Source of the DNA: Ranitomeya imitator
Taxonomy: Eukaryota
Direction of reading: 5' to 3'
Assembly: GCF_032444005.1 (NCBI RefSeq)
Contig: NC_091288.1
Coordinates: 8,804,001-8,868,000 of the forward strand
DNA length: 64,000 nucleotides
This document shows, piece after piece, positions 995-40,491 of this stretch (position 1 is the stretch's first letter; each line of letters opens with the position of its first letter). Made by a program: the position numbers and the translations under genes. The notes under the pieces were generated by a model. The model worked only from the letters and a program-made list of their open reading frames with translations. It was not told the origin of the DNA and searched no databases.

Positions 995-1694
995 CCTGCA
1001 CAGACCCCACCTCTTGGGCCCCTGCACAGACCCCACCTCTTGGGCCCCTGCACAGACCCCACCTCTTGGGCCCCTGCACAGACCCCACCTCTTGGGCCCC
1101 TGCACAGACCCCACCTCTTGGGCCCCTGCACAGACCCCACCTCTTGGGCCCCTGCACAGACCCCACCTCTTGGGCCCCTGCACAGACCCCACCTCTTGGG
1201 CCCCTGCACAGACCCCACCTCTTGGGCCCCTGCACAGACCCCACCTCTTGGGTCCCTGCACAGACCCCACCTCTTGGGCCCCTGCACAGACCCCACCTCT
1301 TGGGCCCCTGCACAGACCCCACCTCTTGGGTCCCTGCACAGACCCCACCTCTTGGGCCCCTGCACAGACCCCACCTCTTGGGCCCCTGCACAGACCCCAA
1401 CTCTTGGGCCCCTGCACAGACCCCACCTCTTGGGCCCCTGCACAGACCCCACCTCTTGGGCCCCTGCACAGACCCCACCTCTTGGGTCCCTGCACAGACC
1501 CCAACTCTTGGGCCCCTGCACAGACCCCACCTCTTGGGCCCCTGCACAGACCCCACCTCTTGGGCCCCTGCACAGACCCCACCTCTTGGGCCCCTGCACA
1601 GACCCCACCTCTTGGGCCCCTGCACAGACCCCACCTCTTGGGCCCCTGCACAGACCCCACCTCTTGGGCCCCTGCACAGACCCCACCTCTTGGG
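995..1694. repeat. Minisatellite, 26-bp unit (cctgcacagaccccacctcttgggcc), ~27 copies
   Basis: Unit read directly. It explains the six overlapping ORFs with 26-aa periodicity. Confidence 0.97.
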
Positions 1695-2233: not shown

Positions 2234-3575
2234 GGTGGGAAACACGGGTGGGAGACACAGATGGGAGACACTGGTGGGAGACGCTGGTAGGAAACACTGG
2301 TGGGAGACACAGATGGGAGACGCTGGTGGGAGACGCTGGTGGGAGACGCTGGTAGGAAACACTGGTGGGAGACACAGATGGGAGACACTGGTGGGAGACG
2401 CTGGTAGGAAACACTGGTGGGAGACACAGATGGGAGACGCTGGTGGGAGACGCTGGTAGGAAACACTGGTGGGAGACACAGATGGGAGACACTGGTGGGA
2501 GACGCTGGTAGGAAACAGTGGTGGGAGACACAGATGGGAGACACTGGTGGGAGACGCTGGTAGGAAACACTGGTGGGAGACACAGATGGGAGACACTGGT
2601 GGGAGACGCTGGTAGGAAACACTGGTGGGAGACACAGATGGGAGACACTGGTGGGAGACGCTGGTAGGAAACACTGGTGGGAGACACAGATGGGAGACGC
2701 TGGTGGGAGACGCTGGTAGGAAACAGTGGTGGGAGACACAGATGGGAGACACTGGTGGGAGACGCTGGTAGGAAACAGTGGTGGGAGACGCTGGTAGGAA
2801 ACACTGGTGGGAGACACAGATGGGAGACGCTGGTGGGAGACGCTGGTGGGAGACGCTGGTAGGAAACACTGGTGGGAGACACAGATGGGAGACGCTGGTG
2901 GGAGACGCTGGTAGGAAACAGTGGTGGGAGACACTGGTGGGAGACACTGGTGGGAGACGCTGGTAGGAAACACTGGTGGGAGACACTGGTGGGAGACACA
3001 GATGGGAGACGCTGGTAGGAAACACTGGTAGGAAACACTGGTGGGAGACACTGGTGGGAGACGCTGGTAGGAAACACTGGTGGGAGACACAGATGGGAGA
3101 CGCTGGTGGGAGACGCTGGTAGGAAACAGTGGTGGGAGACACTGGTGGGAGACGCTGGTAGGAAACACTGGTGGGAGACACAGATGGGAGACGCTGGTGG
3201 GAGACGCTGGTGGGAGACGCTGGTAGGAAACACTGGTGGGAGACACAGATGGGAGACACAGATGGGAGACGCTGGTAGGAAACACTGGTGGGAGACACAG
3301 ATGGGAGACGCTGGTGGGAGACGCTGGTGGGAGACGCTGGTAGGAAACACTGGTGGGAGACACAGATGGGAGACACAGATGGGAGACGCTGGTAGGAAAC
3401 ACTGGTGGGAGACACAGATGGGAGACACTGGTGGGAGACGCTGGTAGGAAACAGTGGTGGGAGACACAGATGGGAGACACTGGTGGGAGACGCTGGTGGG
3501 AGACACAGATGGGAGACGCTGGTGGGAGACGCTGGTAGGAAACACTGGTGGGAGACACAGATGGGAGACGCTGGT
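2234..3575. repeat. Minisatellite of 13-bp variant subunits (ggtgggagacaca / gatgggagacrct / ggtgggagacgct / ggtaggaaacact), ~100 subunits
   Basis: Read directly. The subunits often form a 52-bp tetramer. Confidence 0.95.
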
Positions 3576-3841
3576 GACACGGCATCGTTTTTTCACATTC
3601 GTGTCTTACATGGATGTGTGAAGACGGCCTTTCAGAGTATCTGAGGAATGGATGTAATTGTAGCAGCCCCTCTGCTGTGAGCAGGACTGGGCATACAGCA
3701 GACACTGTCCTCAGTGAGCTGAGATCTTCCAGATGATAAGAAATTAAAACAAAGTATATTTGACATTTCTATAACTTCTCCTACCAGGAAGCCGCACTAA
3801 GAAAACCAGAGCGGCCGATGGCGACATTGTGAAACTGCCGA

Positions 3842-3932: not shown

Positions 3933-4606
3933 TTAGTTCTGGCTGTAGTGATTGGGGTAGTACTCCCCTGCTCCGGGCAGCGGTTCGGGGGAGCAGTTCT
4001 TCCTGCTCCGGCTCTTGTCACACAGACCCCCCCAGTATATGGCGCCGTCAGTATTGAGCAGAGCGGAGTGGCAGCTGTCGAACCACCACCCTCCTCCATA
4101 GGCCTCTGCGCAGTTCTTGCTCCAGCGGTCGTGGTCTCTGTCTGTGGTGGAGAACTTCATGTTGTCATGGGTCCCCGTCTCATTCATGGTGGTCATGGCG
4201 TCCCCCGCGGTCCCAGAGTAGTCCCCCAACCTCAGGCTGTAGTCGTTCCCCTCACTGTCCACCCTGAAGCTAGAATAGTCTGCATGATATTTGTTACCCT
4301 GACCGTCGACCAGCAGGATCCTGACCGTGAAGGGGCTGTGCTTGGTAAGGTGGTGGATCAGGTCATTGCCCAACCAGTGGTCCCCAGTCAGATCACCAAA
4401 GCCATTTCTGTACTGGCCCCAGTTATGAGACCCAAAAGACATGGAGTCCTGCAGTGAGTTCCTCTGCAGGAAGGTCCAGCCAGCCCCCTCCGGACTCAGG
4501 TCACAGTACGCCACCATTGGAGGGGAGGCCTTAGGCCACAGCACATACAGCCCACTGGTCCTTCTCATGTTCAGATAAGCCGCTCTGCAATCTTTGGCCA
4601 CAAGTT
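3933..4606 (-). CDS. FReD-A terminal coding exon: complete fibrinogen C-terminal (FReD) domain of a secreted fibrinogen-related protein
   Basis: Acceptor ttttttttag at 4608-4607. The phase-1 join G+AA gives ..FRG-E-LVAKDC. FReD motifs present: KDC, GWTFLQR, YRNGFG, HWLGND, AGDAM, MKFSTTDRDHD, NCA..GGGWWFDSCH..LN. Stop TAA at 3935-3933. Confidence 0.93.
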
Positions 4607-5746
4607 CTAAAAAAAGATTAAAGATAAGTTATAAAGGGTTAAATACACAAAAATCAGTCACTTTATGCTCCATTCACACAACCACGTGAGGCTACGGTCA
4701 CACCGCCATGTTTTCAATTCGAGCGGTGACCGTGAAAAATGGGTCTATATGTGCAGAAACCGAGGATCGCCCCTCGTACGGACCACCCGCCCAGCATGCG
4801 ATATTGACAGATAGGCCGGGGTCCTATGAGTGTATGGCACGGGATGAGAGAGGTGATGACCCCCGGCTCCGCTGCGAGCGTCCGCGCTCCGTTATCTCAC
4901 GTGACAGGATCGGAGGAGACAAGGTCATGTCTCCATCGCCGGCGGCCATTGCACTGCACTGAGGTGATATCACACGGATCCATAGACTTACATGGGTGCG
5001 TGCTGCCGAATAATGGCCGATTAGAGAAACACTGGGGCGAGTGCAGTCCGACCTGTCACCTGATTGCAGCGCACAGGACTGAGCCGGACGAGAAAACTGG
5101 AGGAAAACAAGCAGCTTGTACTCGCTCCAGCCCAAAGGCAATGAATCCGTTTTTCGTCCTTGTTGTTTCCGTTCTTTCTCCCCAGAGCACGACGCGTCTT
5201 CAGTGCGTCATTTATGTGGATCGCCATAGACTTTAATGGCCAAGTCTGAACAGCAAAATGGATGAGACCAGGACGAGCTGCGAGTCTCACGGAGCCGATG
5301 TGTGTATGAATCCATGAAGCCCTGTGGGTCCGAGAAGAAAACGGACAGTGCCGGGACGTGCCAGCGCGGCCTCGGGGAGTGTTCACACATGGCGGTTTTC
5401 ACGCATTCTATGTGGTCAGTAAATAGTCATCGCTCTGCAGAATCACCGTAATAATAGTGGCATTTCTGAACTCATGTACACACACTGCGTTTTTTTCCAT
5501 GTGTATTTTCAGTCCGCATGTATTGCAGAGCTTTTAACCCTTTAAAAATGAATAAGTGAAAAATGCAAAAAAATAACTAAAAACACCATTTGTATTGTGC
5601 GCAGCAGCTTTTCCAGCTGCTCCTAGATGCAGTGGGAGCTCAGTGGACAGTTGTGTGGTCAGAGCGGAGCTGTTACATCATGCTGTCAAGTTGGTGACTG
5701 CAGCTTTGGAGGTGACTGGAGCATCAGACACAATCAGTCCACATAA

Positions 5747-6378
5747 GGCTGCGTGCCCGCGATCAGGAGAAGCAGTGTCTTGGACGCAGCGTCTTTGCGC
5801 TTTCTAATCGCGCAGTTAATTCTGCATGTTCTTAGTGACCTGCGCGGCGTCACCGCATGTAATGAACGGCTCTGGGGGACTCTACAGAAATGCTGCGGCT
5901 TGTAGTCCGCCCCGCGGGGGGGTGTACGCAGCGCAAAACACAAGCACAGCGGGCCGGAGATTCCTACACGTCCCATCCACTGAGCTTGTAATGTAGAACG
6001 CAGCGTTTGGAAGCAGCGCAAATGTTTCTCTGCAACTTTTCAGCTGGTTTTTACAGTACAGCAAAGTCTGAGATTTCAGGAATCTCCAGCACGTTGGGGT
6101 TTTGTGCTTTGCATTGAAAGTGATGGATGGTGAAAAAGGTGGATCAGGTTTTGCTGCGTTTTTTGAAGTAGAAGATGATTTTTTTTTCACTAAACTTTAT
6201 CAGCATGCAGGATAGACAAATGTAGCATGGCAAAAATGCAGCAAAAAATGCACAAAAATTCAGCAAAAAAAAAATGCAAGAAAAACGAAGCAAAACCTGC
6301 TTTTTTCTGCAGCTTCTTTTTACTCTCAAGAAAGTAGGTTTTACTGCAAAAAAAAAACCACCACATGCGAACATAGCC
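5747..6378. mobile_element. Degenerate Harbinger-type MITE in FReD-A intron
   Basis: Ends GGCTGCGTGCCCGCG / GGCTATGTTCGCATG (rc). Flanks are TAA and TGA (one mismatch). Internal tgc/aaaa-rich tracts resemble the other MITEs in the window. Confidence 0.5.
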
Positions 6379-6739
6379 TGAGGGTAAGTGTTTTAGAAGT
6401 GCACACACCCCTTAAGACATGCCGCCGCCGCCTCTTTATCGTCTTCTTTTTCGCTTTTTGCATTTTCCGGCATTTTTTTACTTTACGTATAATATAAACT
6501 GGGTCCAAGCAGAAGACGCCTGAAGAGCGGACCGGTCACGTCTTTAACCATTTAACGTCTTGGAAATCTGAGGTGGTGAAAAGAAGCTCCAAAGCCTGAC
6601 CGTGTGAACAGCGAGTCGTTTCTATAGAAATTCTTTGCAGCATTTATTCCTGCCGGTTATGGACCGTGTGTCGGCACGTACCGCTCTCCCATCACCCTGT
6701 ATATGGCCCTACTGTCAATGGCGACAGGATGGGACTCAC

Positions 6740-6917
6740 CTCGGAACACCCCGGCCGCCGGCACATTGTGCAGCTGCTGCAGCTGTGCGTGGCTCAGCAC
6801 GTGTCTGTTAGCGAGCTGGGAATATAAATCTGCCCGGGACACGAAGGTGAAAGCTTCACATCTCACAAGGGTCCAGGTGAAGAGGACGCACAGGACAAAG
6901 GGCCACCGAGGAGTCAT
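6740..6917 (-). CDS. FReD-A signal-peptide exon (MTPRWPFVLCVLFTWTLVRCEA-FTF...GVFR)
   Basis: Hydrophobic signal peptide with a C-E-A cleavage site. Donor G|GTGAGT at 6739. Phase 1 matches the acceptor at 4606. Preceded by the acceptor gttttgtgtttcctcag|G at 6920-6919. Confidence 0.88.
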
Positions 6918-7003
6918 CCTGAGGAAACACAAAACAGGGAATCATTGGAACATCCTTGTTCACACCCAGAGGCTGAAAACCTATCCAGACCCAATGACTA
7001 CAA

Positions 7004-7171
7004 CAGCTGAGGGTTTGCTACAATTATATCCAGTGTGGATAATGTGCAGCACAACTGGCCCTGTGCTAATAGAGTGTTACAATGTATCCATGGTGGTGAA
7101 ATGGAGCAGCTTGGAGTGGAGCTCACAGAGCATTGCCGAAAGTGGATACAACTGTAGCAAACGCCCAGCTG
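7004..7171. mobile_element. Small inverted-repeat (MITE-like) element
   Basis: 29-bp arms at 7004-7032 and 7143-7171 are complementary with 4 mismatches. Related cagctgagggtttg sequence occurs near 14133. Confidence 0.55.
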
Positions 7172-7187
7172 TAAGCTATGATAGTCT

Positions 7188-8738
7188 GTTTCTAGACCCC
7201 GACCACGGTGCGTTTCTAGACCCCGACCACGGTGCGTTTCTAGACCCTGACCACTGTGCGTTTCTAGACTCCGACCACTGTGCGTTTCTAGACCCCGACC
7301 ACGGTGCGTTTCTAGACCCTGACCACTGTGCGTTTCTAGACCCCGACCACGGTGCGTTTCTAGACCCTGACCACTGTGCGTTTCTAGACTCCGACCACTG
7401 TGCGTTTCTAGACCCCGACCACGGTGCGTTTCTAGACCCTGACCACTGTGCGTTTCTAGACCCCGACCACGGTGCGTTTCTAGACTCCGACCACTGTGCG
7501 TTTCTAGACCCCGACCACTGTGCGTTTCTAGACCCCGACCACTGTGCGTTTCTAGACCCCGACCACTGTGCGTTTCTAGACCCCGACCACTGTGCGTTTC
7601 TAGACCCCGACCACTGTGCGTTTCTAGACCCCGACCACGGTGCGTTTCTAGACCCCGACCACGGTGCGTTTCTAGACCCCGACCACGGTGCGTTTCTAGA
7701 CCCCGACCACGGTGCGTTTCTAGACCCCGACCACGGTGCGTTTCTAGACCCCGACCACGGTGCGTTTCTAGACCCCGACCACGGTGCGTTTCTAGACCCC
7801 GACCACGGTGCGTTTCTAGACCCCGACCACGGTGCGTTTCTAGACCCCGACCACGGTGCGTTTCTAGACCCCGACCACGGTGCGTTTCTAGACCCCGACC
7901 ACTGTGCATTTCTAGACTCCGAGCACTGTGCTTTTCTAGACTCCGATCATGGTGCGTTTCTAGACCCCGACCACTGTGTGTTTCTAGACCCCGATCATGG
8001 TGTGTTTCTAGACCCCGACCACTGTGCGTTTGTAGACCCCGATCATGGTGTGTTTCTAGACCCCGACCACTGTGCGTTTCTAGACCCCGATCATGGTGTG
8101 TTTCTAGACCCCGACCACTGTGCGTTTCTAGACCCCGACCACTGCGTGATTCTAGACCCCGACCACTACGTTTCTAGACCCCCGACCGCTGTGCGTTTCT
8201 AGACCCCGACCATGGTGCGTTTCTAGACCCCGACCATGGTGCGTTTCTAGACCCCGACCACGGTGCGTTTCTAGACCCCGACCGCTGTGCGTTTCTAGAC
8301 CCCGACCGCTGTGCGTTTCTAGACCCTGACCACTGCGTTTCTAGACCCTGACCACTGCGTTTCTAGACCCTGACCACTGCGTTTCTAGACCCTGACCACT
8401 GCGTTTCTAGACCCTGACCACTGCGTTTCTAGACCCCGACCACGGTGCGTTTCTAGACCCCGACCACTGTGCGTTTCTAGACCCTGACCACTGCGTTTCT
8501 AGACCCCGACCACTGCGTTTCTAGACCCTGACCACTGCGTTTCTAGACCCTGACCACTGCGTTTCTAGACCCCGACCACGGTGCGTTTCTAGACCCCGAC
8601 CACTGTGCGTTTCTAGACCCCGACCACTGTGCGTTTCTAGACCCCGACCACGGTGCGTTTCTAGACCCCGACCACTGTGCGTTTCTAGACCCTGACCACT
8701 GCGTTTCTAGACCCTGACCACTACGTTTCTAGACCCCC
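7188..8738. repeat. Minisatellite, 24-bp unit (gaccacggtgcgtttctagacccc), ~65 copies, in FReD-A intron 1
   Basis: Read directly. 22-23 bp deletion variants accumulate after ~8150. Confidence 0.97.
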
Positions 8739-9127
8739 CTTACCCGCGCAGTTTTGTCCTACAACATTTGTGTTATTATGTTTGAAACTTCAATATTTTT
8801 GCACTTAAAAATTATGAATGAAATCTTCACTAAAAATGTGTTAATAAATAAAACCGCAATAATCAGAGCAGATTGGTGTTTGCAGAAAACCATAGGGGAA
8901 AAACAGCATTTTCGCTCCTGGAGAATTTTTGAAGTCGGCGTTGTTTGTTGCTGCTATTTGCCGCACGATTAACTTTTCTCCAGTTCTACTGAGTTTACGA
9001 GTTTTTAAAAAGTTCTAATTCCTAAATGTGGCCCAGACGTCTGTCCGCAGCTCACCGGGCCACATTGCCATATATCGTACATCTACCCCACCAATGCCCA
9101 TGGATCTCCTCCCTGGGGGGCACTTAC

Positions 9128-9175
9128 ATTGGGACCACAGGCACCTGCTCCTCGCAGCGTCTCCGGGGCCGCACT
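9128..9175 (-). other. Probable first (5') exon of FReD-A
   Basis: TATAAAA at 9207-9201 on the - strand, then ~48 nt, then the canonical donor AAT|GTAAGT at 9127. Splicing to 6918 creates an in-frame ATG-ATG. The start coordinate is estimated from TATA spacing. Confidence 0.6.
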
Positions 9176-9200
9176 GCGCTCATATGAAGCTCCTGGGATA

Positions 9201-9207
9201 TTTTATA
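9201..9207 (-). promoter_or_regulatory. TATA box of FReD-A (TATAAAA)
   Basis: ttttata on the + strand, ~75 nt upstream of a consensus donor. Confidence 0.55.
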
Positions 9208-9694
9208 GGTCAGTAAAATCCCGGAGATGTTTGTGAGCAGAGTTTATGATAAATGAAATATATCAAATTCTCCCCACGTGCCCGGGCGACCGGACTCCAG
9301 CTGGCATCATAAAGCGGGCACTGGCAATAAAGGAAGCGGCTTCCTCCTCGTCAGATCATCGGGAAGACTAGTTAACCTTTTCAGATCTGTCCAGAATAAG
9401 GGGATGTTCAAGCCCCGAAAACCCTGAAATATCTGCACCCCTGGCATCTTATAAGAAACTGATACAAAGTAGCAATTCAGAACGTGTGCCCCATCCCCCA
9501 CAACACAGGCGGACTTACTATCGGTGCAATCTGTGCAGCCACACGGGGCCCAAAGGGTAAAGGGGCCACTAGCACCTCCAAAGCAGGTGGGATTGTGCAT
9601 TATGGGCTGTCTGTCATATATTATTCTGCACAGGGGCCCTGCTGTCTGTGCACCAAGGAAACATCAAGTGCAAGTTGTAATGTAGTACGAAAAT

Positions 9695-10300
9695 GGATCG
9701 GCACAGACGTAAAAAACGGACACATGGATCGTGCACAGACGTAAACAACAGACACAGATCGCACACAGACGAAAAAACGGACACACGGATCACACGCAGA
9801 TATAAAAACCGGACACATGGATCACACACAGATATAAAAAACGGACACATGGATCGAGCACAGACGTAAACAACAGACACGGATCGCACACAGATGAAAA
9901 AACGGACACATGTATCATGCACAGATGTAAAAAAATGGACACAGATCACGTACAGACGTAAAAAAAATGGACACATGGATCGAGCACAGACGTAAAAAAC
10001 GGACACATGTATCACGCACAGATATAAAAAACGGACGCATGGATCGCGCACATACGTAAAAAACGGACACATGTATCACGCACAGACGTAAAAAAATGGA
10101 CACATGGATCGAGCACAGACGTAAAAAACGGACACATGGATCACGCACAGATATAAAAAACGGACACATGGATCACACACAGATATAAAAAACAGACACA
10201 TGGATCACGCACAGACGTAAAAAATGGACACATGGATCGAGCACAGACGTAAAAAACGGACACATGGATCACGCACAGATATAAAAAACAGACACATGGA
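9695..10300. repeat. Minisatellite, ~32-bp unit (gcacagacgtaaaaaacggacacatggatcga), ~19 copies
   Basis: Read directly. Confidence 0.93.
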
Positions 10301-10789
10301 TACCAATCTGATGAAATTAGGAAAATAGTGGTCCCAGTTTTCTGAAGACGATTTTTCATTCGCTTGTCTGCAGGCGCCCGTCTACTCAGACACCAATCTG
10401 CATCAGCAGAGCTGCAGTGTAAAGTATAGAAGTGCGGGGCGACCAGTAGTCTGAGCAACTGGTGAAACAGATTAATTCCAGGCAGCAGAGACTCCAGCCA
10501 ATAATGCAGCTAAGCTGGAGTCACTGGACGTAACATGGGTGAGCATTACAGAGCAGAGCTGCAGTGTAAAGCATTAGGGTGCAACAGAATAGAAGGTTTT
10601 ACCTCCAACTATACAAAAGACAGATTCAAACTGAGACTCCAATAGATAATGCAGCTAAGTTCCATGTCACAGAGCAAAACTGCAGTGTAAAGTATGGAAA
10701 AGAAACAGAACAAGTGTCTGAGCCTCTGATGAAACAGCAGACACATTTTATGCTTCCTCAGACTCTGGCGTCTGACAGCTGAAGTTACT

Positions 10790-13310
10790 GAGATAGGCAG
10801 CAGGTAGGGGTCAGCATTGGGGATGATGATGAAGGGGAAGAAGGTAGGAGTCAGCAGTGGGGATGATGATGATGATGAAGGGGCAGCAGGTAGGGGTCAG
10901 CATTGGGGATGATGATGATGAAGGGGCAGCAGGTAGGGGTCAGCATTGGGGATGATGATGAAGGGGCAGCAGGTAGGGGTCAGCATTGGGGATGATGATG
11001 AAGGGGCAGCAGGTAGTGGTCAGCACTGGGGATGATGATGAAGGGGCAGCAGGTAGTGGTTAGCATTGGGGATGATGATGAAGGGGCAGCAGGTAGGGGT
11101 CAGCACTGGAGATGATGAAGGGGCAGCAGGTAGTGGTCAGCTTTGGGGATGATTATGGGGCAGCAGGTAGGGGTCAGCATTGGGGATGATGATTATGGGG
11201 CAGCAGGTAGGGGTCAGCATTGTGGATGATGATGAAGGGGCAGCAGGTTGGGGTCAGCATTGGGGATGATGAAGGGGCAGCAGGTAGGGGTCAGCACTGG
11301 GGATAATTATGATGGAACAGCAGGTAGGAGTCAGCATTGTGGATGATGATTAAGAGGCAGCAGGTAGGGGTCAGCATTGGGGATGATGAAGGGGCAGCAG
11401 GTAGGAGTCAGCACTGGGAATGATTATGACGGAACAGCAGGTAGGGGTCAGCATTGTGGATGATGATTAAGGGGCAGCAGGTAGGGGTCAGCACTGGGGA
11501 TGATGATTAAGGGGCAGCAGGTAGGGGTCAGCACTGGGGATGATTATGACGGAGCAGCAGGTAGGGGTCAGCATTGTGGATGATGAAGGGGCAGCAGTAG
11601 GGGTCAGCATTAAAGATGAAGGGGCAGCAGGTTGGGGTCAGCATTGGGGATGATGATTAAGGGGCGGCAGGTAGGGGTCAGCATTGTGGATGATGATGAG
11701 GGGGCAGCAGGTAGGGGTCAGCACTGCGGATGATGAAGGGGCAGCAGGTAGGGGTCAGCTTTGGGGATGATGATTAAGGGGCAGCAGGTAGGGGTCAGCA
11801 CTGGGGATGATGAAGGGGCAAGCAGGTAAGGGTCAGCATTAGGAATGATGAAGGGGCAGCAGGTAGGGGTCAGCATTAGGAATGATGATGAAGGGGCAGC
11901 AGGTAGGGGTCAGCATTAGGAATGATGAAGGGGCAGCAGGTAGGGGTCAGCATTGTGGATGATGATTAAGGGGCAGCAGAAAGGGGTCAGCAATGGGGAT
12001 GATTATGACAGAGCCGCAGGTAGGGGTCAGCTTTGGGGATGATGATTAAGGGGCAGCAGGTAGGGGTCAGCACTGGGGATGATGAAGGGGCAAGCAGGTA
12101 AGGGTCAGCATTAGGAATGATGAAGGGGCAGCAGGTAGGGGTCAGCATTAGGAATGATGATGAAGGGGCAGCAGGTAGGGGTCAGCATTAGGAATGATGA
12201 AGGGGCAGCAGGTAGGGGTCAGCATTGGGGACGATGATGAAGGGGCAGCAGGAATGGGTCAGCACTGGGGATAATGAAGGGGCAGCAGGTAGGGGTCAGC
12301 ATTGGGGATGATGATTATGGGGCAGCAGGTAGGGGTCAGCATTGTGGATGATGATTAAGGGGCAGCAGAAAGGGGTCAGCAATGGGGATGATTATGACAG
12401 AGCCGCAGGTAGGGGGTCAGCTTTGGGGATGATGATTAAGGGGCAGCAGGTAGGGGTCAGCACTGGGGATGATGAAGGGGCAAGCAGGTAAGGGTCAGCA
12501 TTAGGAATGATGAAGGGGCAGCAGGTAGGGGTCAGCATTAGGAATGATGATGAAGGGGCAGCAGGTAGGGGTCAGCATTAGGAATGATGAAGGGGCAGCA
12601 GGTAGGGGTCAGCATTGGGGACGATGATGAAGGGGCAGCAGGAATGGGTCAGCACTGGGGATAATGAAGGGGCAGCAGGTAGGGGTCAGCATTGGGGATG
12701 ATGATTATGGGGCAGCAGGTAGGGGTCAGCATTGTGGATGATGATTAAGGGGCAGCAGAAAGGGGTCAGCAATGGGGATGATTATGACAGAGCCGCAGGT
12801 AGGGGTCAGCTTTGGGGATGATGATTAAGGGGCAGCAGGTAGGGGTCAGCACTGGGGATGATGAAGGGGCAAGCAGGTAAGGGTCAGCATTAGGAATGAT
12901 GAAGGGGCAGCAGGTAGGGGTCAGCATTAGGAATGATGATGAAGGGGCAGCAGGTAGGGGTCAGCATTAGGAATGATGAAGGGGCAGCAGGTAGGGGTCA
13001 GCATTGGGGACGATGATGAAGGGGCAGCAGGAATGGGTCAGCACTGGGGATAATGAAGGGGCAGCAGGTAGGGGTCAGCATTGGGGATGATGATTATGGG
13101 GCAGCAGGTAGGGGTCAGCATTGTGGATGATGATGAAGGGGCAGCAGGTTGGGGTCAGCATTGGGGATGAAGGGGCAGCAGGTAGGGGTCAGCACTGGGG
13201 ATGATGAATGGGCAGCAGGTAAGGGTCAGCATTGGGGATGATGATGAAGGGGCAGCAGGTAAGGGACAGCATTGGGGATGATGATGAGGGGGCAGCAGGT
13301 AGGGGAAGGA
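10790..13310. repeat. G-rich minisatellite, 37-40 bp unit (gcaggtaggggtcagcattggggatgatgatgaaggggca), containing a 390-bp higher-order repeat
   Basis: Read directly. The diagnostic variant cagaaagggg recurs at ~11980, 12369 and 12759. Confidence 0.95.
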
Positions 13311-13670
13311 GATGACTCGTAGTTTAGGGAAATACTTCATTGTTCTTTAGCTCTTTGGTGTCAGCAGCAGATGGATGAGGCCAAATGTCTTGTAAATCTG
13401 TATAATGAACCAATAAACTTTTACCAGCTCCTCAGATAATAAATGTCCCCCCACCCGACAGGTGTCAGATACGGCACCCACCCATCAGCCACGTCCGATC
13501 TGCGGATCCGCACAGGTCTGATCCCGGAGCGGCCCTGGCGCCCACACAGGGATATTTTATTATTTGTTCTGGCGTTACAGGACTTTTATTCCTGGTTGGG
13601 TCCCACATTACAGCTGGAGACTCGAACAGTAAAGTTGATGACGGCCCCTTATTCACCAGATATAAAAGGC

Positions 13671-13677
13671 TTTAGTT
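13671..13677 (+). promoter_or_regulatory. TATA box of FReD-B (TATAAAA)
   Basis: Consensus TATA starting 49 nt upstream of the signal-peptide ATG. Confidence 0.65.
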
Positions 13678-13719
13678 GTACATGTCTGAGTGTTTGGGCC
13701 CGGACGTCCCAGTGCCAGG

Positions 13720-13894
13720 ATGCTGCCGGTAAAGCTGTGGACCTGCTGCTGCTTGATGCTGTCCGGTGTCTCCGTCTCCTGGACGGATGAGGCGAATGAT
13801 CCCAAACAAAAGGCAAATCGGCTGATTGCGAATATCAAAATGATCGATGATGTGGGCGCCATTATCAACTACAAAGAGCTACAACAGCGGAAAG
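13720..13894 (+). CDS. FReD-B signal-peptide exon (MLPVKLWTCCCLMLSGVSVS-WTDEA...LQQRK)
   Basis: Hydrophobic N-terminus. Donor AAAG|GTAAGA at 13895. Phase 1 matches the acceptor at 15034. Confidence 0.88.
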
Positions 13895-14169
13895 GTAAGA
13901 CCCCCAACATCTTCACAAGTCAGGACCCCCAACATCCTCATGAGTCAGACGGGGCAATAGTCCTCCATCAATCATAGGCAGACATACCGCTGGGCCGGAT
14001 CATCACCCCCAGGACTGTACCAGCCCCCATGTTAATGAATCAGCCTTTTTATGTCCTCACTGTTTTTAAGATCTCTGATTGCCGACAGTGAGAGGAACAT
14101 TCGTTGATTCTGTCCAAACCGAATACTACTCACAGCTGAGGGTTTGTTACCGGCGAGCTCTCTCCTTAA

Positions 14170-14530
14170 GGCTACTTTCACACTAGCGTCGGACTCGGCC
14201 TGTCGCAGTGCGTCGGGCCGAGGTTCCGATGCTAGCGGTGAATGCGCCGCACAACAGGGGCAGCGGATGCATTTTTCCTGCACATCCGCTGCCCCATTGT
14301 AAGGTGCGGGGAGGTGGGGGCGGAGTTCCGGCCGCGCATGCGCGGTCGGAAAAAGCGGTCCGTCGGCAGCAAAAAACGTTACATGTACGACGGTTGCGAC
14401 GTGTGTCAATGCGTCGCTAATGTTAATCTATGGGGCAAAAACGCATCCTGCAAACTACTTTGCAGGATGCGTTTTTTCCCATAAACGACGCATTGCGACG
14501 TATTGCAAAAAACGCTAGTGTGAAAGTAGC
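14170..14530. mobile_element. Harbinger-type MITE in FReD-B intron
   Basis: TIRs GGCTACTTTCACACTAGCGT / ACGCTAGTGTGAAAGTAGC. Left flank is TAA; the right terminal base and TSD are lost. Confidence 0.7.
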
Positions 14531-15034
14531 AGAGTTCAGGCAGCGGACACGGACGATTCGTTTTTATAAACTGACAGCTAGCAGAGATCTTACCCCCAAA
14601 GATTTACATAGAAAATCAGAACAGGCCCTATAACATTAGTAAATACTACACGTTGTTTCTCCAGAATTGTTGTGTTGGGTTTATAGACGTGAGAGCGACT
14701 TATGGCGACAATGATTAATATGATGGTACCCTAAGGAGGGTCCGATGCCCGCCCCATTACTGGCTTCTCCTACATAGGTGATAGCAATGGAGCAATTCCC
14801 ACCGTCCTCCAGTATAGAGCGCCCCCTATAGCTCATTGGGGCCCTCTGAGGTGCTTCTAAGCTCTTCTCCATGATGGACCCTCTAGAACCCTGACCTCCG
14901 GGTGTTGCAGACGTGGGGTGTAACTTCAGGCATCCTGAGGGGTCTTTGGACGCACGGTCACCCACCTGCACACAACGTCCATATAACTGAGCTGTGAACG
15001 TCCTGATGGTGTCATTAGCTTTGGTCTCTTTCAG

Positions 15035-15684
15035 TCTTTTTCACCAGGGACTGTGATGACCTCTACCTCCTGGGGCACAGGAAGAGCGGGGTCTACGTGA
15101 TCCAGCCGGTGGGCTCCCCTTACCTCGTGGTCCAGTGCTACATGTATGACTGCGGGGGCTGGACCGTCATCCAAAGGAACAGCCTGGGCACAACCATCAC
15201 CTGGAGCGAACCGTGGACGGGGTATGAGTACGGCTTCGGGAACATCGAGCTGGATCATTACCTCGGCAATCACTATATCAATCTGTTATCGGAGCAGAAG
15301 TGGAACAAAGTCCGATTCCTCCTGGTGGATTCTGAGAACAGGACTAAGACGGCGGACTACGACAGCTTCTACCTGACCAACGCTGCGGACAAGTACCGCC
15401 TGAGGCTGGGCTCGTACGAGGGAGACGCCGGGGACGCCATGTCATCGGGGACCCACAAAAACCTACACGACAACATGAGGTTCTCGACCCACGATGACGA
15501 CAATGACCGGCTCTACAATACAAACTGCGCCAATAAGCACGGTGGCGGCTGGTGGTACGACTCCTGCTACGATGCCCACCTCAACAATAAGGGGCTTCTG
15601 CACTGGAAAACGCTCTGCGACCATAACTGCAGGGGCTCGCTGATCCTCATCAAACCCGTCCACATGTATTGTCACCGGGTGTGA
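15035..15684 (+). CDS. FReD-B terminal coding exon: complete fibrinogen C-terminal domain
   Basis: Acceptor ttggtctctttcag at 15034. G+TC gives V-FFTRDC. Motifs present: RDC, GWTVIQR, YEYGFG, YLGN, AGDAM, MRFSTHDDDND, NCA..GGGWWYDSC..LN, ILIKP. Stop TGA at 15682-15684. Confidence 0.95.
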
Positions 15685-15769: not shown

Positions 15770-15775
15770 AATAAA
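15770..15775 (+). promoter_or_regulatory. Polyadenylation signal AATAAA of FReD-B
   Basis: ~86 nt past the stop codon. Confidence 0.7.
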
Positions 15776-16984
15776 GAGCAGCACGTGAGCGGAGTCTGGA
15801 AGCATCACTTCGGCCGCCATGATCGGCCATGGCTGGAGATGTAAGGGGGGCACTCAGCCATCATGGGGGGGATGTATGAAAGGGGTCCTCCTCTGCGCCA
15901 AACTGCCATTATGCCATACTGCCATAGTCAGTTACCAGTCCGGCCACAGATCTTGTAATTGTGCCCCCATGGCCACAACTGACGGCCTCCTAACGTCACT
16001 GCCAGCACTGTCGGGGAGGAGGCCATGGATCGTAGCCACGGGGGCTCAATTATAGTCGGAGGCCGGACTGTTCTGGTAGAAGAGACAGGCGAGTGAGAGG
16101 AGTCACCGGCGTACGCTGACCAGATGGCGTTCTGCACCAGGGACCGATGCACCATCATTTGTGCCTTTTTTGAGCCATTTTCTCATTTCTTTCTTTGCCT
16201 AATTTTTCCATTTTGCATTTTTTTAAGCTTTCCACCACCACCGTGTGCATGGAGAACAACCAGAATTACAGATGTTCTCAACTAATTCATTTGTAACTTT
16301 CCAAAAAGTTGTTTTGGAGAAATGTAATTATTACACCCATTGTGCTTTTTGGTTATTTCTTTGTGCAGATTAACGTGCGAGATTTTAAAGCATCAGGCGA
16401 CTTTCAACTCAACTTCAAGGGCACAAAACACATAAAAGATACAAAAAAAAGCATTTAAAACCAAACCTGCAGTGACCTCATGTTCAGATCAACGCTGCAG
16501 CCAATCACCGGCCACAATAGTCCCTTTATATAAGTAAACACTACCACTGAAGCCAGGGATTGGCTGCAACCATCACATTATGAACATGACGCCATATTAA
16601 GAACTTCCATACTACCCGCCCTCCTGGCTGCGCCATTTAACATAAGTGTGGTGCATTTGGTTGCATTTCACTTTTCGGTAATAAGACCGTTAACTATGTA
16701 AAAAGGACCAGAGTTTAATTCAGTTTCCATTACCTGACAGCAAGCAGAGGTGTTGGAAATTGTATGTTTTCCTTATTAGCTTCTGACTTTTTTCACTTTT
16801 GTTTAAGCAGATGAGATGAAACCCCAGCGGTGTTACATAATATCTGTGCAACGTATCCATAATTTGCCGGATTCTCCGCTTGCTGTCAGGGTCACGCTTG
16901 GTGCAGGGAATGGACTTAGCCTCAATTTTAAACGTAATCCCCATCCTCCTGATAGAGCAGGATTGACATGCTACCGTCACATAT

Positions 16985-18850
16985 ATCCACACCGCACCGC
17001 CTACTGCGACCACACGTATCCACACCGCACGCTGCGAGCACACGTATCCACACCGCACCGCCTGCGGCGACCACACGTATCCACACCGCACAGCCTGCTG
17101 CGACCACACGTATCAACACCGCACAGCCTGCTGCGACCACACGTATCCGCACCACACAGCCTGCTGCGACCACACGTATCAACACCGCACAGCCTGCTGT
17201 GACCACACGTATCCGCACCACACAGCCTGCTGCGACCACACGTATCCACACCGCACAGCCTGCTGCGACCACACGTATCAACACCGCACAGCCTGCTGTG
17301 ACCACACGTATCCGCACCACAGCCTGCTGCAACCACATGCATCCACACCACACAGCCTGCTGCGAGCACATGCATCCACACCGCACAGCCTGCTGCGAGC
17401 ACACGTATCCATACCGCACAGCCTGCTGCGACCACATGCATCCACACCGCACAGCCTGCTGCGAGCACACGTATCCATACCGCACAGCCTGCTGCGACCA
17501 CATGCATCCACACCGCACAGCCTGCTGCGAGCACACGTATCCATACCGCACAGCCTGCTGCGACCACATGCATCCACACCGCACAGCCTGCTGCGAGCAC
17601 ACGTATCCATACCGCACAGCCTGCTGCGACCACACGTATCAACACCGCACAGCCTGCTGCGACCACATGTATCCGCACCACACAGCCTGCTGCGACCACA
17701 TGCATCCACACCACACAGGCTGCTGCGACCACATGCATCCACACCACACAGCCTGCTGCGACCACACGTATCCGCACCACACAGCCTGCTGCGACCACAT
17801 GCATCCACACCGCACAGCCTGCTGCGAGCACACGTATCCATACCGCACAGCCTGCTGCGACCACACGTATCAACACCGCACAGCCTGCTGCGACCACACG
17901 TATCCGCACCACAGCCTGCTGCGACCACATGCATCCACACCACACAGCCTGCTGCGACCACACGTATCCGCACCGCACAGCCTGCTGCAACCACATGCAT
18001 CCACACCGCACAGCCTGCTGCGAGCACACGTATCCGCACCGCACAGCCTGCTGCAACCACATGCATCCACACCGCACAGCCTGCTGCGACCACATGTATC
18101 CGCACCACACAGCCTGCTGCGACCACATGCATCCACACCACACAGCCTGCTGCGACCACATGCATCCACACCACACAGCCTGCTGCGACCACACGTATCC
18201 GCACCACAGCCTGCTGCGACCACATGCATCCACACCACACAGCCTGCTGCGACCACACGTATCCGCACCACACAGCCTGCTGCGACCACACGTATAGACA
18301 TCGCACAGCCTGCTGCGACCACATGCATCCACACCGCACAGCCTGCTGCGACCACATGCATCCACACCGCACAGCCTGCTGCGACCACACGTATCCACAC
18401 CCCACAGCCTGCTGCGACCACATGCATCCACACCGCACAGCCTGCTGCGACCACATGCATCCACACCGCACAGCCTGCTGCGAGCACACGCATCCACACC
18501 GCACAGCCTGCTGCGACCACATGCATCCACACCACACAGCCTGCTGCGACCACACGTATCCACACCCCACAGCCTGCTGCGACCACATGCATCCACACCG
18601 CACAGCCTGCTGCGACCACACGTATAGACATCGCACAGCCTGCTGCGACCACATGCATCCACACCGCACAGCCTGCTGCGACCACACGTATAGACATCGC
18701 ACAGCCTGCTGCGACCACATGCATCCACACCGCACAGCCTGCTGCGACCACACGTATAGACATCGCACAGCCTGCTGCGACCACACGTATCCACACCCCA
18801 CAGCCTGCTGCGAGACCACATATATCCCCACTGCACGTTGCGAGCACACG
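16985..18850. repeat. Minisatellite, 33-bp unit (cacagcctgctgcgaccacacgtatccacaccg), ~56 copies
   Basis: Read directly. The 11-aa periodic ORFs shift frame at 31-bp variants. Confidence 0.96.
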
Positions 18851-19708: not shown

Positions 19709-19929
19709 GTGTCGGATCAGGTGATGCCACAACGCACCTCAGGTCACACAACACTGCACCCGCACCGTAGGAGCGCAGGTTAACCGTCTCCAGGAGGCCG
19801 AGTGCTCGGGAGCAAATAAGAGCATGATGGATCTCAGAGAAAGCGGAGCCATGGGTGCTACTCACAGACAACGAGAAGAGCAGGTTCAACCTCTAGATCC
19901 TGCCCAGGACGGACGGAAAACTCGTGGGC

Positions 19930-20132
19930 GGTCACACCGAGGACCACCCCGGGGGAGGTCACACCGAGGACCACCCCGGGGGAGGTCACACCGAGGACCA
20001 CCCCGGGGGAGGTCACACCGAGGACCACCCCGGGGGAGGTCACACCGAGGACCACCCCGGGGGAGGTCACACCGAGGACCACCCCGGGGGAGGTCACACC
20101 GAGGACCACCCCGGGGGAGGTCACACCGAGGA
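19930..20132. repeat. Minisatellite, 27-bp unit (ggtcacaccgaggaccaccccggggga), 7.5 copies, in TMEM177 3' UTR
   Basis: Read directly. It lies between the TMEM177 stop and the first AATAAA. Confidence 0.95.
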
Positions 20133-20204
20133 TATTGGGAATGGCACCAATGAGGTGTGTGAACATTTAGGGCCCCCTATAAGGGTGCACGTGATTGGGC
20201 CCGA

Positions 20205-21140
20205 TCACTCCGGACGATGCTTCTCCAGGGCGTGCAGGATCCGGTCTCTCCGGCACGTGTACGGGGCGTTCTTCAGTCTCAGTTTATGTTTGGGGAACAG
20301 GTTCCCACTGGGCGCGTACATGGCCTCCCCCTGTTTACCCATAATCCCCCGGAGCAGCCTATTACGTGCCAGTATCTTCTCATAGAACTCCAGCCCACCC
20401 TGGGCGTAGTCCGCAGACACCGCGGCCGCCTTCCTGTCTGACCTGTAGTCCAACCAGTGACTGACTGCATCGTAGCACAGACAGTAGGCCGTAAATCCCA
20501 GTAGAACGGCCAGAACATTGAAGACCCCCCGCAATATCAGGGGTCCGGAGTACAGACCGAGGAGCTGCTTGATGGCCACACTGGAGACACAGACGCTGGT
20601 CAGGCAGAGCGCCGCCACCGACGCCTGCAGGATGGGGCCACTGGTCTGGGCGTGAAGAGCTTCCCGGGCCACGGAGAATTTCTGGGCCTTTAAGGATAAG
20701 GTCAAGGAGTCTCGTAGCCGGATCCCGGGTTCACTCGCCCAGTCCACCTCCTGGCCGTTAACCACCAGCAGACGGTCCGTGGTGCCGGCTCCATCCGCCT
20801 CTGTACTGTTATAATTGGCGGGAATTCCAATCAAGCAGCCGCTGGGAAACCACGGGACCCCGGCACTGACGGGCTGGAAGCCGTACGCCGCAAATGGGGT
20901 GAAACCTGAGGGGGGCAGGTGGGCGTCATCCAGGACCCCACGGAGCAGGGTCTGCAGGCGCTCGCTGAGCGGAGCCGGCTCGCCTCTCGTCCATGCCTGG
21001 TACAACGTCCTGAACGTCTGCTCCGGGAACACGTGGTACGACAGGTTCACAGCAAGCAGAGCTAGAGACGACGTCCCGAGAAGCCTCCCCCGGTGCTGCC
21101 GACTGAAGACGCAGAGCTTCCAGAACAGCGCGGACGCCAT
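20205..21140 (-). CDS. TMEM177: Transmembrane protein 177 (mitochondrial COX2 assembly factor), single coding exon, 311 aa
   Basis: Recognisable motifs SYHVFP, FQPVSAG, IGIPA, VDWASEPG, LTLS..AQKF..ARE, GGLEFYEKIL..N..LR, YAPSGN, PYT.RRD match human TMEM177 as recalled. ATG at 21140 has G at +4. Acceptor tcttgtcag|G with the exon starting at 21151. Confidence 0.95.
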   Translation of the reverse strand: MASALFWKLCVFSRQHRGRLLGTSSLALLAVNLSYHVFPEQTFRTLYQAWTRGEPAPLSERLQTLLRGVLDDAHLPPSGFTPFAAYGFQPVSAGVPWFPSGCLIGIPANYNSTEADGAGTTDRLLVVNGQEVDWASEPGIRLRDSLTLSLKAQKFSVAREALHAQTSGPILQASVAALCLTSVCVSSVAIKQLLGLYSGPLILRGVFNVLAVLLGFTAYCLCYDAVSHWLDYRSDRKAAAVSADYAQGGLEFYEKILARNRLLRGIMGKQGEAMYAPSGNLFPKHKLRLKNAPYTCRRDRILHALEKHRPE

Positions 21141-21199
21141 GCTCCGACAACCTGACAAGAGAACAGACAAGAGTCAGAAATCAGAGGATGTGACAGGAG

Positions 21200-22412
21200 G
21201 ACACGACAGCGAGTAACTACAGGGGCAGCCAAGGACAGGGGTCACTGACAGCGAGTAACTACAGGGGCAGCCAAGGACAGGGGTCACTGACAGCGAGTAA
21301 CTACAGGGGCAGCCCAGGACAGGGGTCACTGACAGCGAGTAACTACAGGGGCAGCCCAGGACAGGGGTCACTGACAGCGAGTATCTACAGGGGCAGCCCA
21401 GGACAGGGGTCACTGACAGCGAGTAACTACAGGGGCAGCCAAGGACAGGGGTCACTGACAGCGAGTAACTACAGGGGCAGCCCAGGACAGGGGTCACTGA
21501 CAGCGAGTATCTACAGGGGCAGCCCAGGACAGGGGTCACTGACAGCGAGTAACTACAGGGGCAGCCAAGGACAGGGGTCACTGACAGCGAGTAACTACAG
21601 GGGCAGCCCAGGACAGGGGTCACTGACAGCGAGTATCTACAGGGGCAGCCCAGGACAGGGGTCACTGACAGCGAGTAACTACAGGGGCAGCCCAGGACAG
21701 GGGTCACTGACAGCGAGTAACTACAGGGGCAGCCCAGGACAGGGGTCACTGACAGCGAGTAACTACAGGGGCAGCCCAGGACAGGGGTCACTGACAGCGA
21801 GTAACTACAGGGGCAGCCCAGGACAGGGGTCACTGACAGCGAGTAACTACAGGGGCAGCCCAGGACAGGGGTCACTGACAGCGAGTAACTACAGGGGCAG
21901 CCAAGGACAGGGGTCACTGACAGCAAGTAACTACAGGGGCAGCCAAGGACAGGGGTCACTGACAGCGAGTAACTACAGGGGCAGCCCAGGACAGGGGTCA
22001 CTGACAGCGAGTAACTACAGGGGCAGCCCAGGACAGGGGTCACTGACAGCAAGTAACTACAGGGGCAGCCAAGGACAGGGGTCACTGACAGCGAGTAACT
22101 ACAGGGGCAGCCAAGGACAGGGGTCACTGACAGCGAGTAACTACAGGGGCAGCCCAGGACAGGGGTCACTGACAGCGAGTATCTACAGGGGCAGCCCAGG
22201 ACAGGGGTCACTGACAGCGAGTATCTACAGGGGTCACTGACAGCGAGTAACTACAGGGGCAGCCCAGGACAGGGGTCACTGACAGCGAGTTTCTACAGGG
22301 GCAGCCCAGGAGAGGGGTCACTGACAGCAAGTAACTACAGGGGCAGCCCAGGACAGGGGTCACTGACAGCGAGTATCTACAGGGGCAGCCCAGGACAGGG
22401 GTCACTGACAGC
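21200..22412. repeat. Minisatellite, 42-bp unit (gacagcgagtaactacaggggcagcccaggacaggggtcact), ~29 copies, in TMEM177 intron
   Basis: Read directly. It gives a 14-aa periodic ORF. Confidence 0.96.
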
Positions 22413-40458: not shown

Positions 40459-40491
40459 GCTGCCCCTGCATTTGTTTCGTCCTGCACTTAC

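What the first reader, a model, noticed from the sequence alone, without database searches (positions are those of the whole stretch)
3933..15684. Head-to-head pair of secreted, fibrinogen-domain-only paralogues
Seen: two divergently transcribed genes, each encoding a signal peptide, a ~35-40 aa linker and one FReD, joined by a phase-1 intron just before the xDC motif. Their TATA boxes (9201 and 13671) face away from each other ~4.5 kb apart. Manual alignment gives roughly 45% domain identity, so the duplication is old. Established: fibrinogen chains, angiopoietins, FGL2 and ficolins carry coiled-coil or collagen oligomerisation segments N-terminal to the FReD; these two proteins do not. Inference: a co-regulated pair of stand-alone lectin-like or pattern-recognition proteins, possibly acting as a hetero-oligomer in secretions such as gut, skin or oviduct. 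I cannot assign an orthologue; a generic 'fibrinogen-like protein 1-like' label is plausible.
Basis: partly seen in the sequence, partly recalled or inferred. Interest (0 to 1): 0.7.

Follow-up and report, generated by a model that had tools for sequence, protein, structure and literature searches.

The report
Conserved frog fibrinogen-like gene pair
Two neighbouring, back-to-back genes for small secreted fibrinogen-domain proteins are really there, but they are the frog copies of two ancient gene lineages already catalogued in many vertebrates (function still untested), so the locus is ordinary apart from a 33-base omission in the assembly.

Summary
Gene A (- strand, exons 9183-9128, 6918-6740, 4606-3933) and gene B (+ strand, exons 13720-13894, 15035-15684) each encode a signal peptide, a ~40-residue N-terminal segment and one fibrinogen-related domain (FReD). 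Both have a phase-1 intron five codons before the DC motif. The FReD exons are 45% identical and the TATAAAA boxes lie 4.45 kb apart.

[quoted passage not shown] A tree gives three old clades: A (amphibians, squamates, turtles, crocodile), B (amphibians, squamates, coelacanth, elephant shark) and C (birds plus two frogs). Accession order suggests that TMEM177, B and A are neighbours in frogs, a salamander and a gecko.

The family has a shortened P subdomain, seven conserved cysteines (an eighth only in clade B) and a conserved N-terminal segment that folds against the domain without a coiled coil.

The window's gene A lacks 33 bases encoding the last core β-strand. Read-derived contigs from three runs, one of them spliced RNA, carry those bases, so this is an assembly omission or a private allele.

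Co-regulation and hetero-oligomerisation remain untested. The promoters are separate, with 3.1 kb of minisatellite between them.

The parts
9201..9207 (-). TATAAAA box of gene A
   Evidence: read directly
9128..9183 (-). Gene A exon 1. It is short and has an ATG at 9183-9181 only 24 nt after the TATA start, so it is probably 5'UTR. The donor AT|gtaagt at 9128/9127 splices in frame to exon 2.
   Evidence: the same N-terminal extension MSAVRPRRRCEEQV.. is present in NCBI isoform X1 of R. variabilis, P0001
7188..8737 (.). 24-nt tandem repeat, about 65 copies, inside intron 1 of gene A
6740..6918 (-). Gene A exon 2: ATG at 6917, signal peptide plus conserved N-terminal segment (59 codons + 1 nt, phase 1)
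   Evidence: matches orthologues P0001/P0002; covered by RNA contig X15 record 9
3933..4606 (-). Gene A exon 3: whole FReD plus Cys/Pro-rich tail; stop at 3935-3933; AATAAA at 3933-3928 overlaps the stop
   Evidence: splice 4606|6740 in X15
4005..4006 (-). Site where the window lacks 33 nt (encoding ..CRASSIMVKPG.., the last core β-strand and a family-invariant Cys) that read-derived contigs contain
   Evidence: tables 5c and 8 (X1 record 1, X15 record 8, X3 record 14); orthologue sequences; the strand is E262-271 at pLDDT ~96 in the P0002 model
9693..10301 (.). 32-nt tandem repeat (19 copies) in the intergenic region
10796..13305 (.). 40/77-nt tandem repeat (about 64 copies) filling most of the intergenic region
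13661..13668 (+). TATAAAAG box of gene B
   Evidence: read directly
13720..13894 (+). Gene B exon 1 (coding part): signal peptide plus N-terminal segment, 58 codons + 1 nt, donor G|gtaag
   Evidence: same length and 95% identity to the D. tinctorius orthologue P0121
15035..15684 (+). Gene B exon 2: whole FReD, acceptor tttcag at 15029-15034, stop at 15682-15684
15770..15775 (+). AATAAA poly(A) signal of gene B
20205..21170 (-). TMEM177, single coding exon (flanking gene, context)
   Evidence: 89% identical to TMEM177 of Anomaloglossus and Phyllobates; the window's own protein is P0227

Best explanation

Shown:
- Each gene makes a ~275-295-residue secreted protein with a cleavable signal peptide, a conserved ~40-residue N-terminal segment and a single-exon FReD.
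- In the models the N-terminal segment forms short helices and β-bridges, not a coiled coil.
- The FReD keeps the two canonical disulfides and the D-x-D-x-D calcium-loop residues.
- The distal P subdomain is 12-14 residues shorter than in FGL1 and carries three extra family-invariant cysteines.
- The two genes have separate TATA promoters.
- The gene order TMEM177-B-A appears to have been inherited since before the amphibian-amniote split (inferred from accession order only).

Inferred:
- They act as soluble, calcium-stabilised recognition or ligand proteins of blood or other body fluids. Proteins with this NCBI name were measured in turtle plasma and in infected trout liver.
- Because the loop that forms the classical ligand pocket is missing, their ligand differs from the acetyl groups bound by ficolins, FIBCD1 and tachylectin 5A.
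- Clade A, with seven cysteines and the last one in a disordered tail, could form disulfide-linked homodimers.
- Clade B has an eighth cysteine that would cap the odd one.

The 11-residue gap in the window's gene A is an assembly omission or a private allele, not a feature of the gene.
For: Identity:
- Pfam PF00147 on both FReD exons.
- Best hits are named FGL1L: A is 98% identical over aligned columns to R. variabilis, B is 95% identical to D. tinctorius.
- The careful ML tree gives clade A 100/99, B 100/98 and C 97/87, with the window genes nested inside the neobatrachian A and B groups.

Linkage:
- Consecutive RefSeq accessions or locus tags: Dendropsophus TMEM177/B/A = XP_069840912/913/914; Rana temporaria XP_040211572-574; X. 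tropicalis XENTR_v10024867/868; Pleurodeles XP_069080711/712; Paroedura XP_077176674-680.
- A, B and TMEM177 lie on one 521-kb Nanorana scaffold.

Expression: a spliced exon 2-exon 3 contig in run X15.

Structure:
- AF2 models of orthologues P0121 (pLDDT 83.6) and P0002 (86.3) show only short helices in the N-terminal segment, with pLDDT above 90 there in A.
- Foldseek gives a generic FReD fold, TM 0.84-0.87 to ANGPTL6, FGL1, ficolins and TL5A.
- Alignments to Pfam and to all PDB FReDs stop at the LN(N/G) motif.
- The stretch from the P-domain Cys to the final [KR]P is 30-33 residues, against 44 in FGL1.
- Cysteines: seven family-wide columns; Cys98 is present in 31/31 clade-B sequences and 0/34 others.
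- D212/D214/D216 are invariant or nearly so.

Assembly omission: 33 extra nt in contigs of X1, X15 and X3.

Body fluids: two FGL1L-named proteins in green-turtle plasma (PMC8084024); one in trout liver after infection (PMC6167799).
Against: - No functional study of any FGL1L protein was found, so every functional statement is inference.
- Gene B's transcription was not examined, because the single read-laying run went to gene A.
- The tissue of run X15 is coded and unknown.
- The turtle and trout proteins were not matched to clades A, B or C.
- Gene order in other species rests on accession order, an indirect proxy. Orientation there is unknown. Numbering is not adjacent in Anolis sagrei, Bombina or Lithobates pipiens.
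- Placement of the long Callorhinchus branch in clade B may be unreliable.
Confidence: 0.8

Rival explanations
1. The two genes are a co-regulated unit whose products assemble into an A/B hetero-oligomeric lectin in mucosal or glandular secretions.
For: The A/B neighbourhood appears to be conserved across amphibians and a gecko, which is compatible with shared regulation. Both proteins share a conserved N-terminal segment with two near-invariant Asn that could mediate association.
Against: The promoters are 4.45 kb apart, each has its own TATA box, and 3.1 kb of minisatellite lies between them, so this is not a classical bidirectional promoter. A has an odd number of cysteines and B an even number, so a covalent A/B dimer is unlikely. 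The pair is not adjacent by accession numbering in Anolis sagrei. No expression data for B and no interaction prediction were obtained.
Confidence: 0.12
2. Gene A in this species is decaying. An in-frame 33-nt deletion has removed the last core β-strand and a conserved cysteine, leaving B as the only functional member.
For: The window sequence itself lacks the segment, while every orthologue has it. In the model the segment is a confident core strand.
Against: Contigs of a DNA run of the same organism (X1), of a spliced RNA run of the same organism (X15) and of a related organism (X3) all contain the 33 nt. None of the laid contigs shows the deleted form. The rest of the reading frame is intact and 98% identical to R. 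variabilis.
Confidence: 0.04
3. Same genes, different mode of action. They are cytokine-like ligands for cell-surface receptors, as FGL1 and FGL2 are, rather than pattern-recognition lectins.
For: In the sampled tree the FGL1L clade sits next to FGL2 (SH-aLRT 87). The two-coding-exon layout with the whole FReD in one exon resembles FGL2 as I recall it (memory, not tested). The classical carbohydrate/acetyl pocket loop is missing.
Against: No receptor is known. FGL2's long coiled coil is absent. The sister position is weakly supported and outgroup sampling is thin.
Confidence: 0.3

Closest known systems
[quoted passage not shown] Ranitomeya variabilis P0001, Dendrobates tinctorius P0121, Xenopus tropicalis XENTR_v10024867/868
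   Same: They are orthologues: 95-98% identity to dendrobatid models, the same length (B is 274 aa), the same exon layout implied by the upstream-exon isoform, the same cysteine pattern, and the same neighbours by accession order.
   Different: Nothing biological. The window's copy of A lacks 33 nt that the reads restore.
FGL2 (fibroleukin)
   Same: Secreted FReD protein. It is the nearest sampled outgroup to the FGL1L clade.
   Different: FGL2 has a long N-terminal coiled coil and a full-length P subdomain. FGL1L has a 40-residue compact N-terminal segment and a P tail of 30-33 residues.
FGL1 (hepassocin)
   Same: Small secreted FReD protein and source of the automated name. PDB 7tz2 is among the best sequence and fold matches.
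   Different: The window genes are not in the FGL1 clade (FGL1 100/98 separate). FGL1 has 44 residues from the P-domain Cys to the final RP and lacks the three extra cysteines.
Tachylectin 5A / ficolins / FIBCD1 (acetyl-group-binding FReD lectins)
   Same: FReD fold, calcium-loop aspartates and the P-domain disulfide. TL5A (1jc9) is the best PDB sequence hit at 2.2e-32.
   Different: Alignment stops at the NLNG motif. The following loop and aromatic-rich segment, which by my recollection of the TL5A and FIBCD1 structures supply the pocket tyrosines, is deleted or replaced by a Cys-x3-5-Cys motif. There is no collagen-like region.
MFAP4
   Same: About 255-aa secreted protein consisting of a signal peptide, a short N-terminal piece and one FReD, so it is also 'FReD-only'.
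   Different: It is only a distant sequence match (E 9e-25). It has a full-length P subdomain, and its N-terminal Cys/RGD region (from memory) is unrelated to the FGL1L N-terminal segment.

Membership tests
Fibrinogen-related domain (Pfam PF00147) | Profile match above the gathering threshold | tested here: met
   185.5 and 162.4 bits against a cutoff of 22
Fibrinogen-related domain (Pfam PF00147) | Two canonical disulfides (A-domain pair, P-domain pair) and the calcium-loop aspartates | tested here: met
   C65, C93, C223, C236, D214 and D216 are invariant, and D212 is conserved in at least 90%, in the 65-sequence alignment. All are present in both window exons. Pairing is inferred by homology only.
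Fibrinogen-related domain (Pfam PF00147) | Full-length P subdomain (profile positions ~187-221) | tested here: not met
   Matches end at profile position 195 (A) and 186 (B) of 221. PDB alignments end at query residues 184-190. The tail is 30-33 residues against 44 in FGL1. AF2 still places a final β-strand.
[quoted passage not shown] | Falls inside the FGL1L clade in a tree, as 1:1 orthologue of clade A or clade B | tested here: met
   Clades A 100/99 and B 100/98; the window genes are nested with dendrobatid orthologues
[quoted passage not shown] | Three extra conserved cysteines after the P-domain disulfide, plus Cys98 in clade B | tested here: met
   Window B has all eight. Window A shows six in exon 3, and the seventh lies in the 33 nt supplied by the reads.
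FGL1 proper | Groups with FGL1 orthologues | tested here: not met
   FGL1 (lamprey and teleosts) forms its own 100/98 group outside FGL1L
Ficolin / tachylectin-5A-type acetyl-binding lectins | Collagen-like stalk (ficolins) and the pocket-forming loop after NLNG | tested here: not met
   No collagen repeats in exon 1/2 translations. The loop is absent. The identity of the pocket residues is from memory.
Bidirectional-promoter gene pair | Divergent transcription starts less than about 1 kb apart sharing one promoter region | tested here: not met
   The TATA boxes are 4454 bp apart, with 3.1 kb of tandem repeats between them
Secreted protein | N-terminal signal peptide | tested here: inconclusive
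   Both have a basic n-region, a 13-14-residue hydrophobic core and small residues at -1/-3 by eye. No signal-peptide predictor was available. Same-named proteins were found in turtle plasma.

The most novel reading that the evidence does not exclude
FGL1L is an essentially undescribed vertebrate FReD subfamily. It is present from elephant shark to birds, and no mammalian member appeared in these searches. Its ligand pocket has been rebuilt: a 12-14-residue loop is deleted and a Cys-x3-5-Cys motif takes the place of the aromatic-rich segment. It also carries its own conserved N-terminal module. On this reading, the long-conserved A-B adjacency next to TMEM177 reflects a functional partnership between a covalently dimerising A and a non-covalent B.
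Probability: 0.2. Interest if true: 0.45.

Novelty: new member of a known kind. Interest (0 to 1): 0.25.

Why it matters
For genome annotation, both genes can be named as FGL1L orthologues. Gene A's model in this assembly needs correcting, because the sequence as it stands predicts a protein without its last core strand.

For biology the value is modest. The analysis documents that FGL1L comprises three ancient clades with a remodelled P subdomain and a clade-specific cysteine parity. No experimental work on the family was found, although proteins carrying this name appear in reptile plasma and in infected fish liver. It could therefore be a neglected humoral recognition family in non-mammalian vertebrates.

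Tried and rejected
Gene orientation and exact spacing in other species could not be read, so accession order and shared contig lengths were used as proxies.
- The promoter/terminator scan uses bacterial consensus sequences and says nothing about this eukaryotic locus. It was disregarded.
- The search of earlier findings returned nothing by place or by the word 'fibrinogen'.
- Pfam gave no hit for the TMEM177 ORF. The word search identified it instead.
- The pseudogene reading for gene A was considered and rejected on read evidence.
- A third FReD copy in the window was looked for and not found.
- The full-length spliced proteins of the window were never joined or submitted to any tool. All searches were exon by exon, by reference. 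Full-length folds used database orthologues P0121 and P0002.
- Disulfide geometry and the packing of the N-terminal segment could not be measured because model coordinates are not exposed.
- Absence from mammals is not claimed. The word search scored only 190-205 candidates, and the large exhaustive search was not run.
Full report
**What is in the sequence**

Two exons match the Pfam fibrinogen C-terminal domain. One is at 4601-3936 on the minus strand (E 1.6e-54). The other is at 15037-15681 on the plus strand (E 1.9e-47). They are 45% identical over 196 residues. tblastn finds no further copy in the 64-kb window.

Gene B was read directly from the sequence:
- TATAAAAG at 13661-13668.
- ATG at 13720; exon 1 runs to 13894 (58 codons plus one base, donor G|gtaag).
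- An 1140-nt intron, acceptor tttcag, exon 2 from 15035, stop at 15682-15684.
- AATAAA at 15770.
- The implied protein is 274 residues, the same length as the Dendrobates tinctorius and Phyllobates orthologues.

Gene A has three exons:
- TATAAAA at 9207-9201, followed by a short first exon ending AT|gtaagt at 9128.
- Exon 2 at 6918-6740. The junction base plus the ATG at 6917 gives Met-Met, followed by a signal peptide and a ~40-residue segment. The exon ends in phase 1.
- Exon 3 at 4606-3933, holding the whole domain and a Cys/Pro-rich tail. An AATAAA overlaps the stop codon.

The ATG in exon 1 lies only 24 nt after the start of the TATA box, so it probably sits at or before the transcription start. 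NCBI's isoform X1 of the Ranitomeya variabilis orthologue nevertheless begins there (P0001).

In both genes the phase-1 intron sits five codons before the D-C motif. This is the same position in each, so the intron predates the duplication.

**Read evidence**

Runs are coded. X1 is a DNA run of the same organism as most of the listed holders, X3 is a related organism, and X15 behaves as RNA.
- An X15 contig joins 4606 to 6740, skipping 2133 nt with GT..AG on the minus strand. This confirms that gene A is transcribed and that exons 2 and 3 splice as modelled.
- Another X15 contig ends near 3922, consistent with the poly(A) signal at the stop codon.
- Contigs of X1, X15 and X3 all carry 33 extra bases between window positions 4006 and 4005. 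Translated on the minus strand, they encode ..CRASSIMVKPG...
- The window lacks exactly this segment relative to every orthologue. In the AlphaFold model of orthologue P0002 it is the last β-strand (E262-271, pLDDT about 96), and it contains a family-invariant cysteine.
- No laid contig shows the deleted form.

The window therefore carries an assembly omission, or at most a private allele. The real gene A encodes about 294 residues.

**Identity**

- A is 98% identical over aligned columns to R. variabilis.
- B is 95% identical to D. tinctorius.
- TMEM177 at 20205-21170 is 89% identical to that of Anomaloglossus and Phyllobates.
- The source is therefore a dendrobatid frog close to Ranitomeya.

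A careful maximum-likelihood tree of 60 rows resolves three groups:
- Clade A (100/99): anurans, salamanders, a caecilian, squamates, turtles and a crocodile.
- Clade B (100/98): anurans, salamanders, a caecilian, squamates, coelacanth and elephant shark.
- Clade C (97/87): birds plus one Anomaloglossus and one Spea protein.

FGL1 and FGL2 lie outside these groups. The A/B duplication therefore predates the amphibian-amniote split. It may predate crown gnathostomes, but the elephant shark branch is long, so that is less secure. In the quick tree FGL2, not FGL1, was the nearer outgroup (SH-aLRT 87), so the automated name may be a misnomer.

**Neighbourhood**

| Species | Accessions or locus tags |
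|---|---|
| Dendropsophus ebraccatus | TMEM177, B, A = XP_069840912, 913, 914 |
| Rana temporaria | B, A = XP_040211572-573, 574 |
| Xenopus tropicalis | B, A = XENTR_v10024867, 868 |
| Pleurodeles waltl | B, A = XP_069080711, 712 |
| Anomaloglossus baeobatrachus | the three genes share XP_075174872-875 |
| Paroedura picta (gecko) | A-like XP_077176674-678, B XP_077176680 |
| Spea bombifrons | A and B differ by four |

- In Nanorana, A, B and TMEM177 share a 521-kb scaffold.
- The numbering is not adjacent in Anolis sagrei, Bombina or Lithobates pipiens.
- Orientation in other species is unknown.

Within the window, the 4454 bp between the two TATA boxes is mostly minisatellite: a 32-mer ×19 at 9693-10301 and a 40-mer ×64 at 10796-13305. 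This is two promoters back to back, not a shared bidirectional promoter.

**Protein anatomy**

A 65-sequence alignment and a column count show:
- Seven cysteine columns conserved across all three clades. In P0121 numbering these are 65, 93, 223, 236, 253, 257 and 271.
- An eighth cysteine, Cys98, present in 31 of 31 clade-B proteins and in none of the 34 others.
- Calcium-loop aspartates D214 and D216 invariant, and D212 nearly so.
- Two near-invariant Asn residues in the N-terminal segment, so this segment is a conserved family module rather than a loose linker.

AlphaFold models of full-length orthologues were used because the window's spliced proteins were deliberately not joined. P0121 stands for B (mean pLDDT 83.6) and P0002 for A (86.3).
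- Both models give the N-terminal segment only short helices and β-bridges. Confidence there is above 90 in A. Neither has a long helix.
- The A tail after residue 276, which starts at the last conserved Cys, is disordered.
- Foldseek finds the generic FReD fold, with TM 0.84-0.87 to ANGPTL6, FGL1, ficolins, tachylectin 5A and FIBCD1, and no specially close structure.

Sequence alignments to Pfam and to every solved FReD stop at the LN(N/G) motif. From the P-domain cysteine to the terminal [KR]P there are 30-33 residues in FGL1L against 44 in FGL1. The missing part is the loop after NLNG. The following aromatic-rich stretch is replaced by Cys-x3-5-Cys. From memory of the TL5A, ficolin and FIBCD1 structures, those segments supply the tyrosines of the acetyl-binding pocket. 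I therefore infer that the ligand is different.

**Function**

I found no functional study. The family name occurs in two papers and the symbol FGL1L in three, one of which uses it for a mouse genotype.
- Two proteins of this name were quantified in green-turtle plasma (PMC8084024).
- One is listed among infection-responsive proteins of trout liver, alongside complement components (PMC6167799).
- Chicken FGL1L sits at a different locus, next to THSD1 and TPTE2 (PMC10976558). That fits clade C being unlinked to the A/B pair.

I did not match these proteins to my clades.

My best reading is that these are secreted, calcium-stabilised humoral recognition or ligand proteins. A may dimerise through its unpaired tail cysteine, while in B the extra Cys98 caps it. 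These last points are inference.

**Verdict**

The interpretation overstates novelty:
- The genes are catalogued orthologues.
- FReD-only proteins are a known kind.
- The co-regulation and hetero-oligomer ideas have no support yet.

The practically useful new result is the 33-nt omission in this assembly's gene A.

Noticed in passing
window 4005-4006: The assembly lacks 33 nt of coding sequence that contigs from three public runs contain. Any gene model built on this assembly will predict an FGL1L-A protein without its last β-strand.
   Followed up: yes
window 995-1694, 2234-3576, 7188-8737, 9693-10301, 10796-13305, 16984-18836, 19926-20150, 21174-22211, 23100-24000, 39400-40600, 62500-63100: There is an unusually dense series of long minisatellite arrays (units of 24-104 nt, up to 65 copies) in introns and intergenic DNA. 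They create long spurious ORFs on both strands.
   Followed up: partly
window 20205-21170 (-): This is a single-exon TMEM177 gene, the conserved neighbour of FGL1L-B. The window's own protein is in the database as P0227, on a 226.8-Mb contig.
   Followed up: yes
window 42393-44765 (-): This is a 790-aa uninterrupted ORF of a LINE-type retrotransposon, with reverse transcriptase and part of the endonuclease domain.
   Followed up: partly
window ~40490-40590 (-): An exon-like stretch encodes ..[30 protein letters not shown].., which looks like the NKxD region of a Ras-superfamily GTPase. It runs straight into a tandem repeat. It was not identified.
   Followed up: no
window 6245-7100, run X7: A run of unknown type has a 973-nt unspliced contig (depth 82) across gene A exon 2 and both flanking introns, but nothing over exon 3. 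It could be capture DNA, an unspliced or alternative transcript, or repeat-driven.
   Followed up: no
clade C proteins P0050 (Anomaloglossus) and P0048 (Spea): Frogs have a third FGL1L paralogue that groups with the bird proteins and lies on a different chromosome-sized contig. This genome probably has one elsewhere too. Some bird models fuse an SRCR domain (PF00530) to it.
   Followed up: partly
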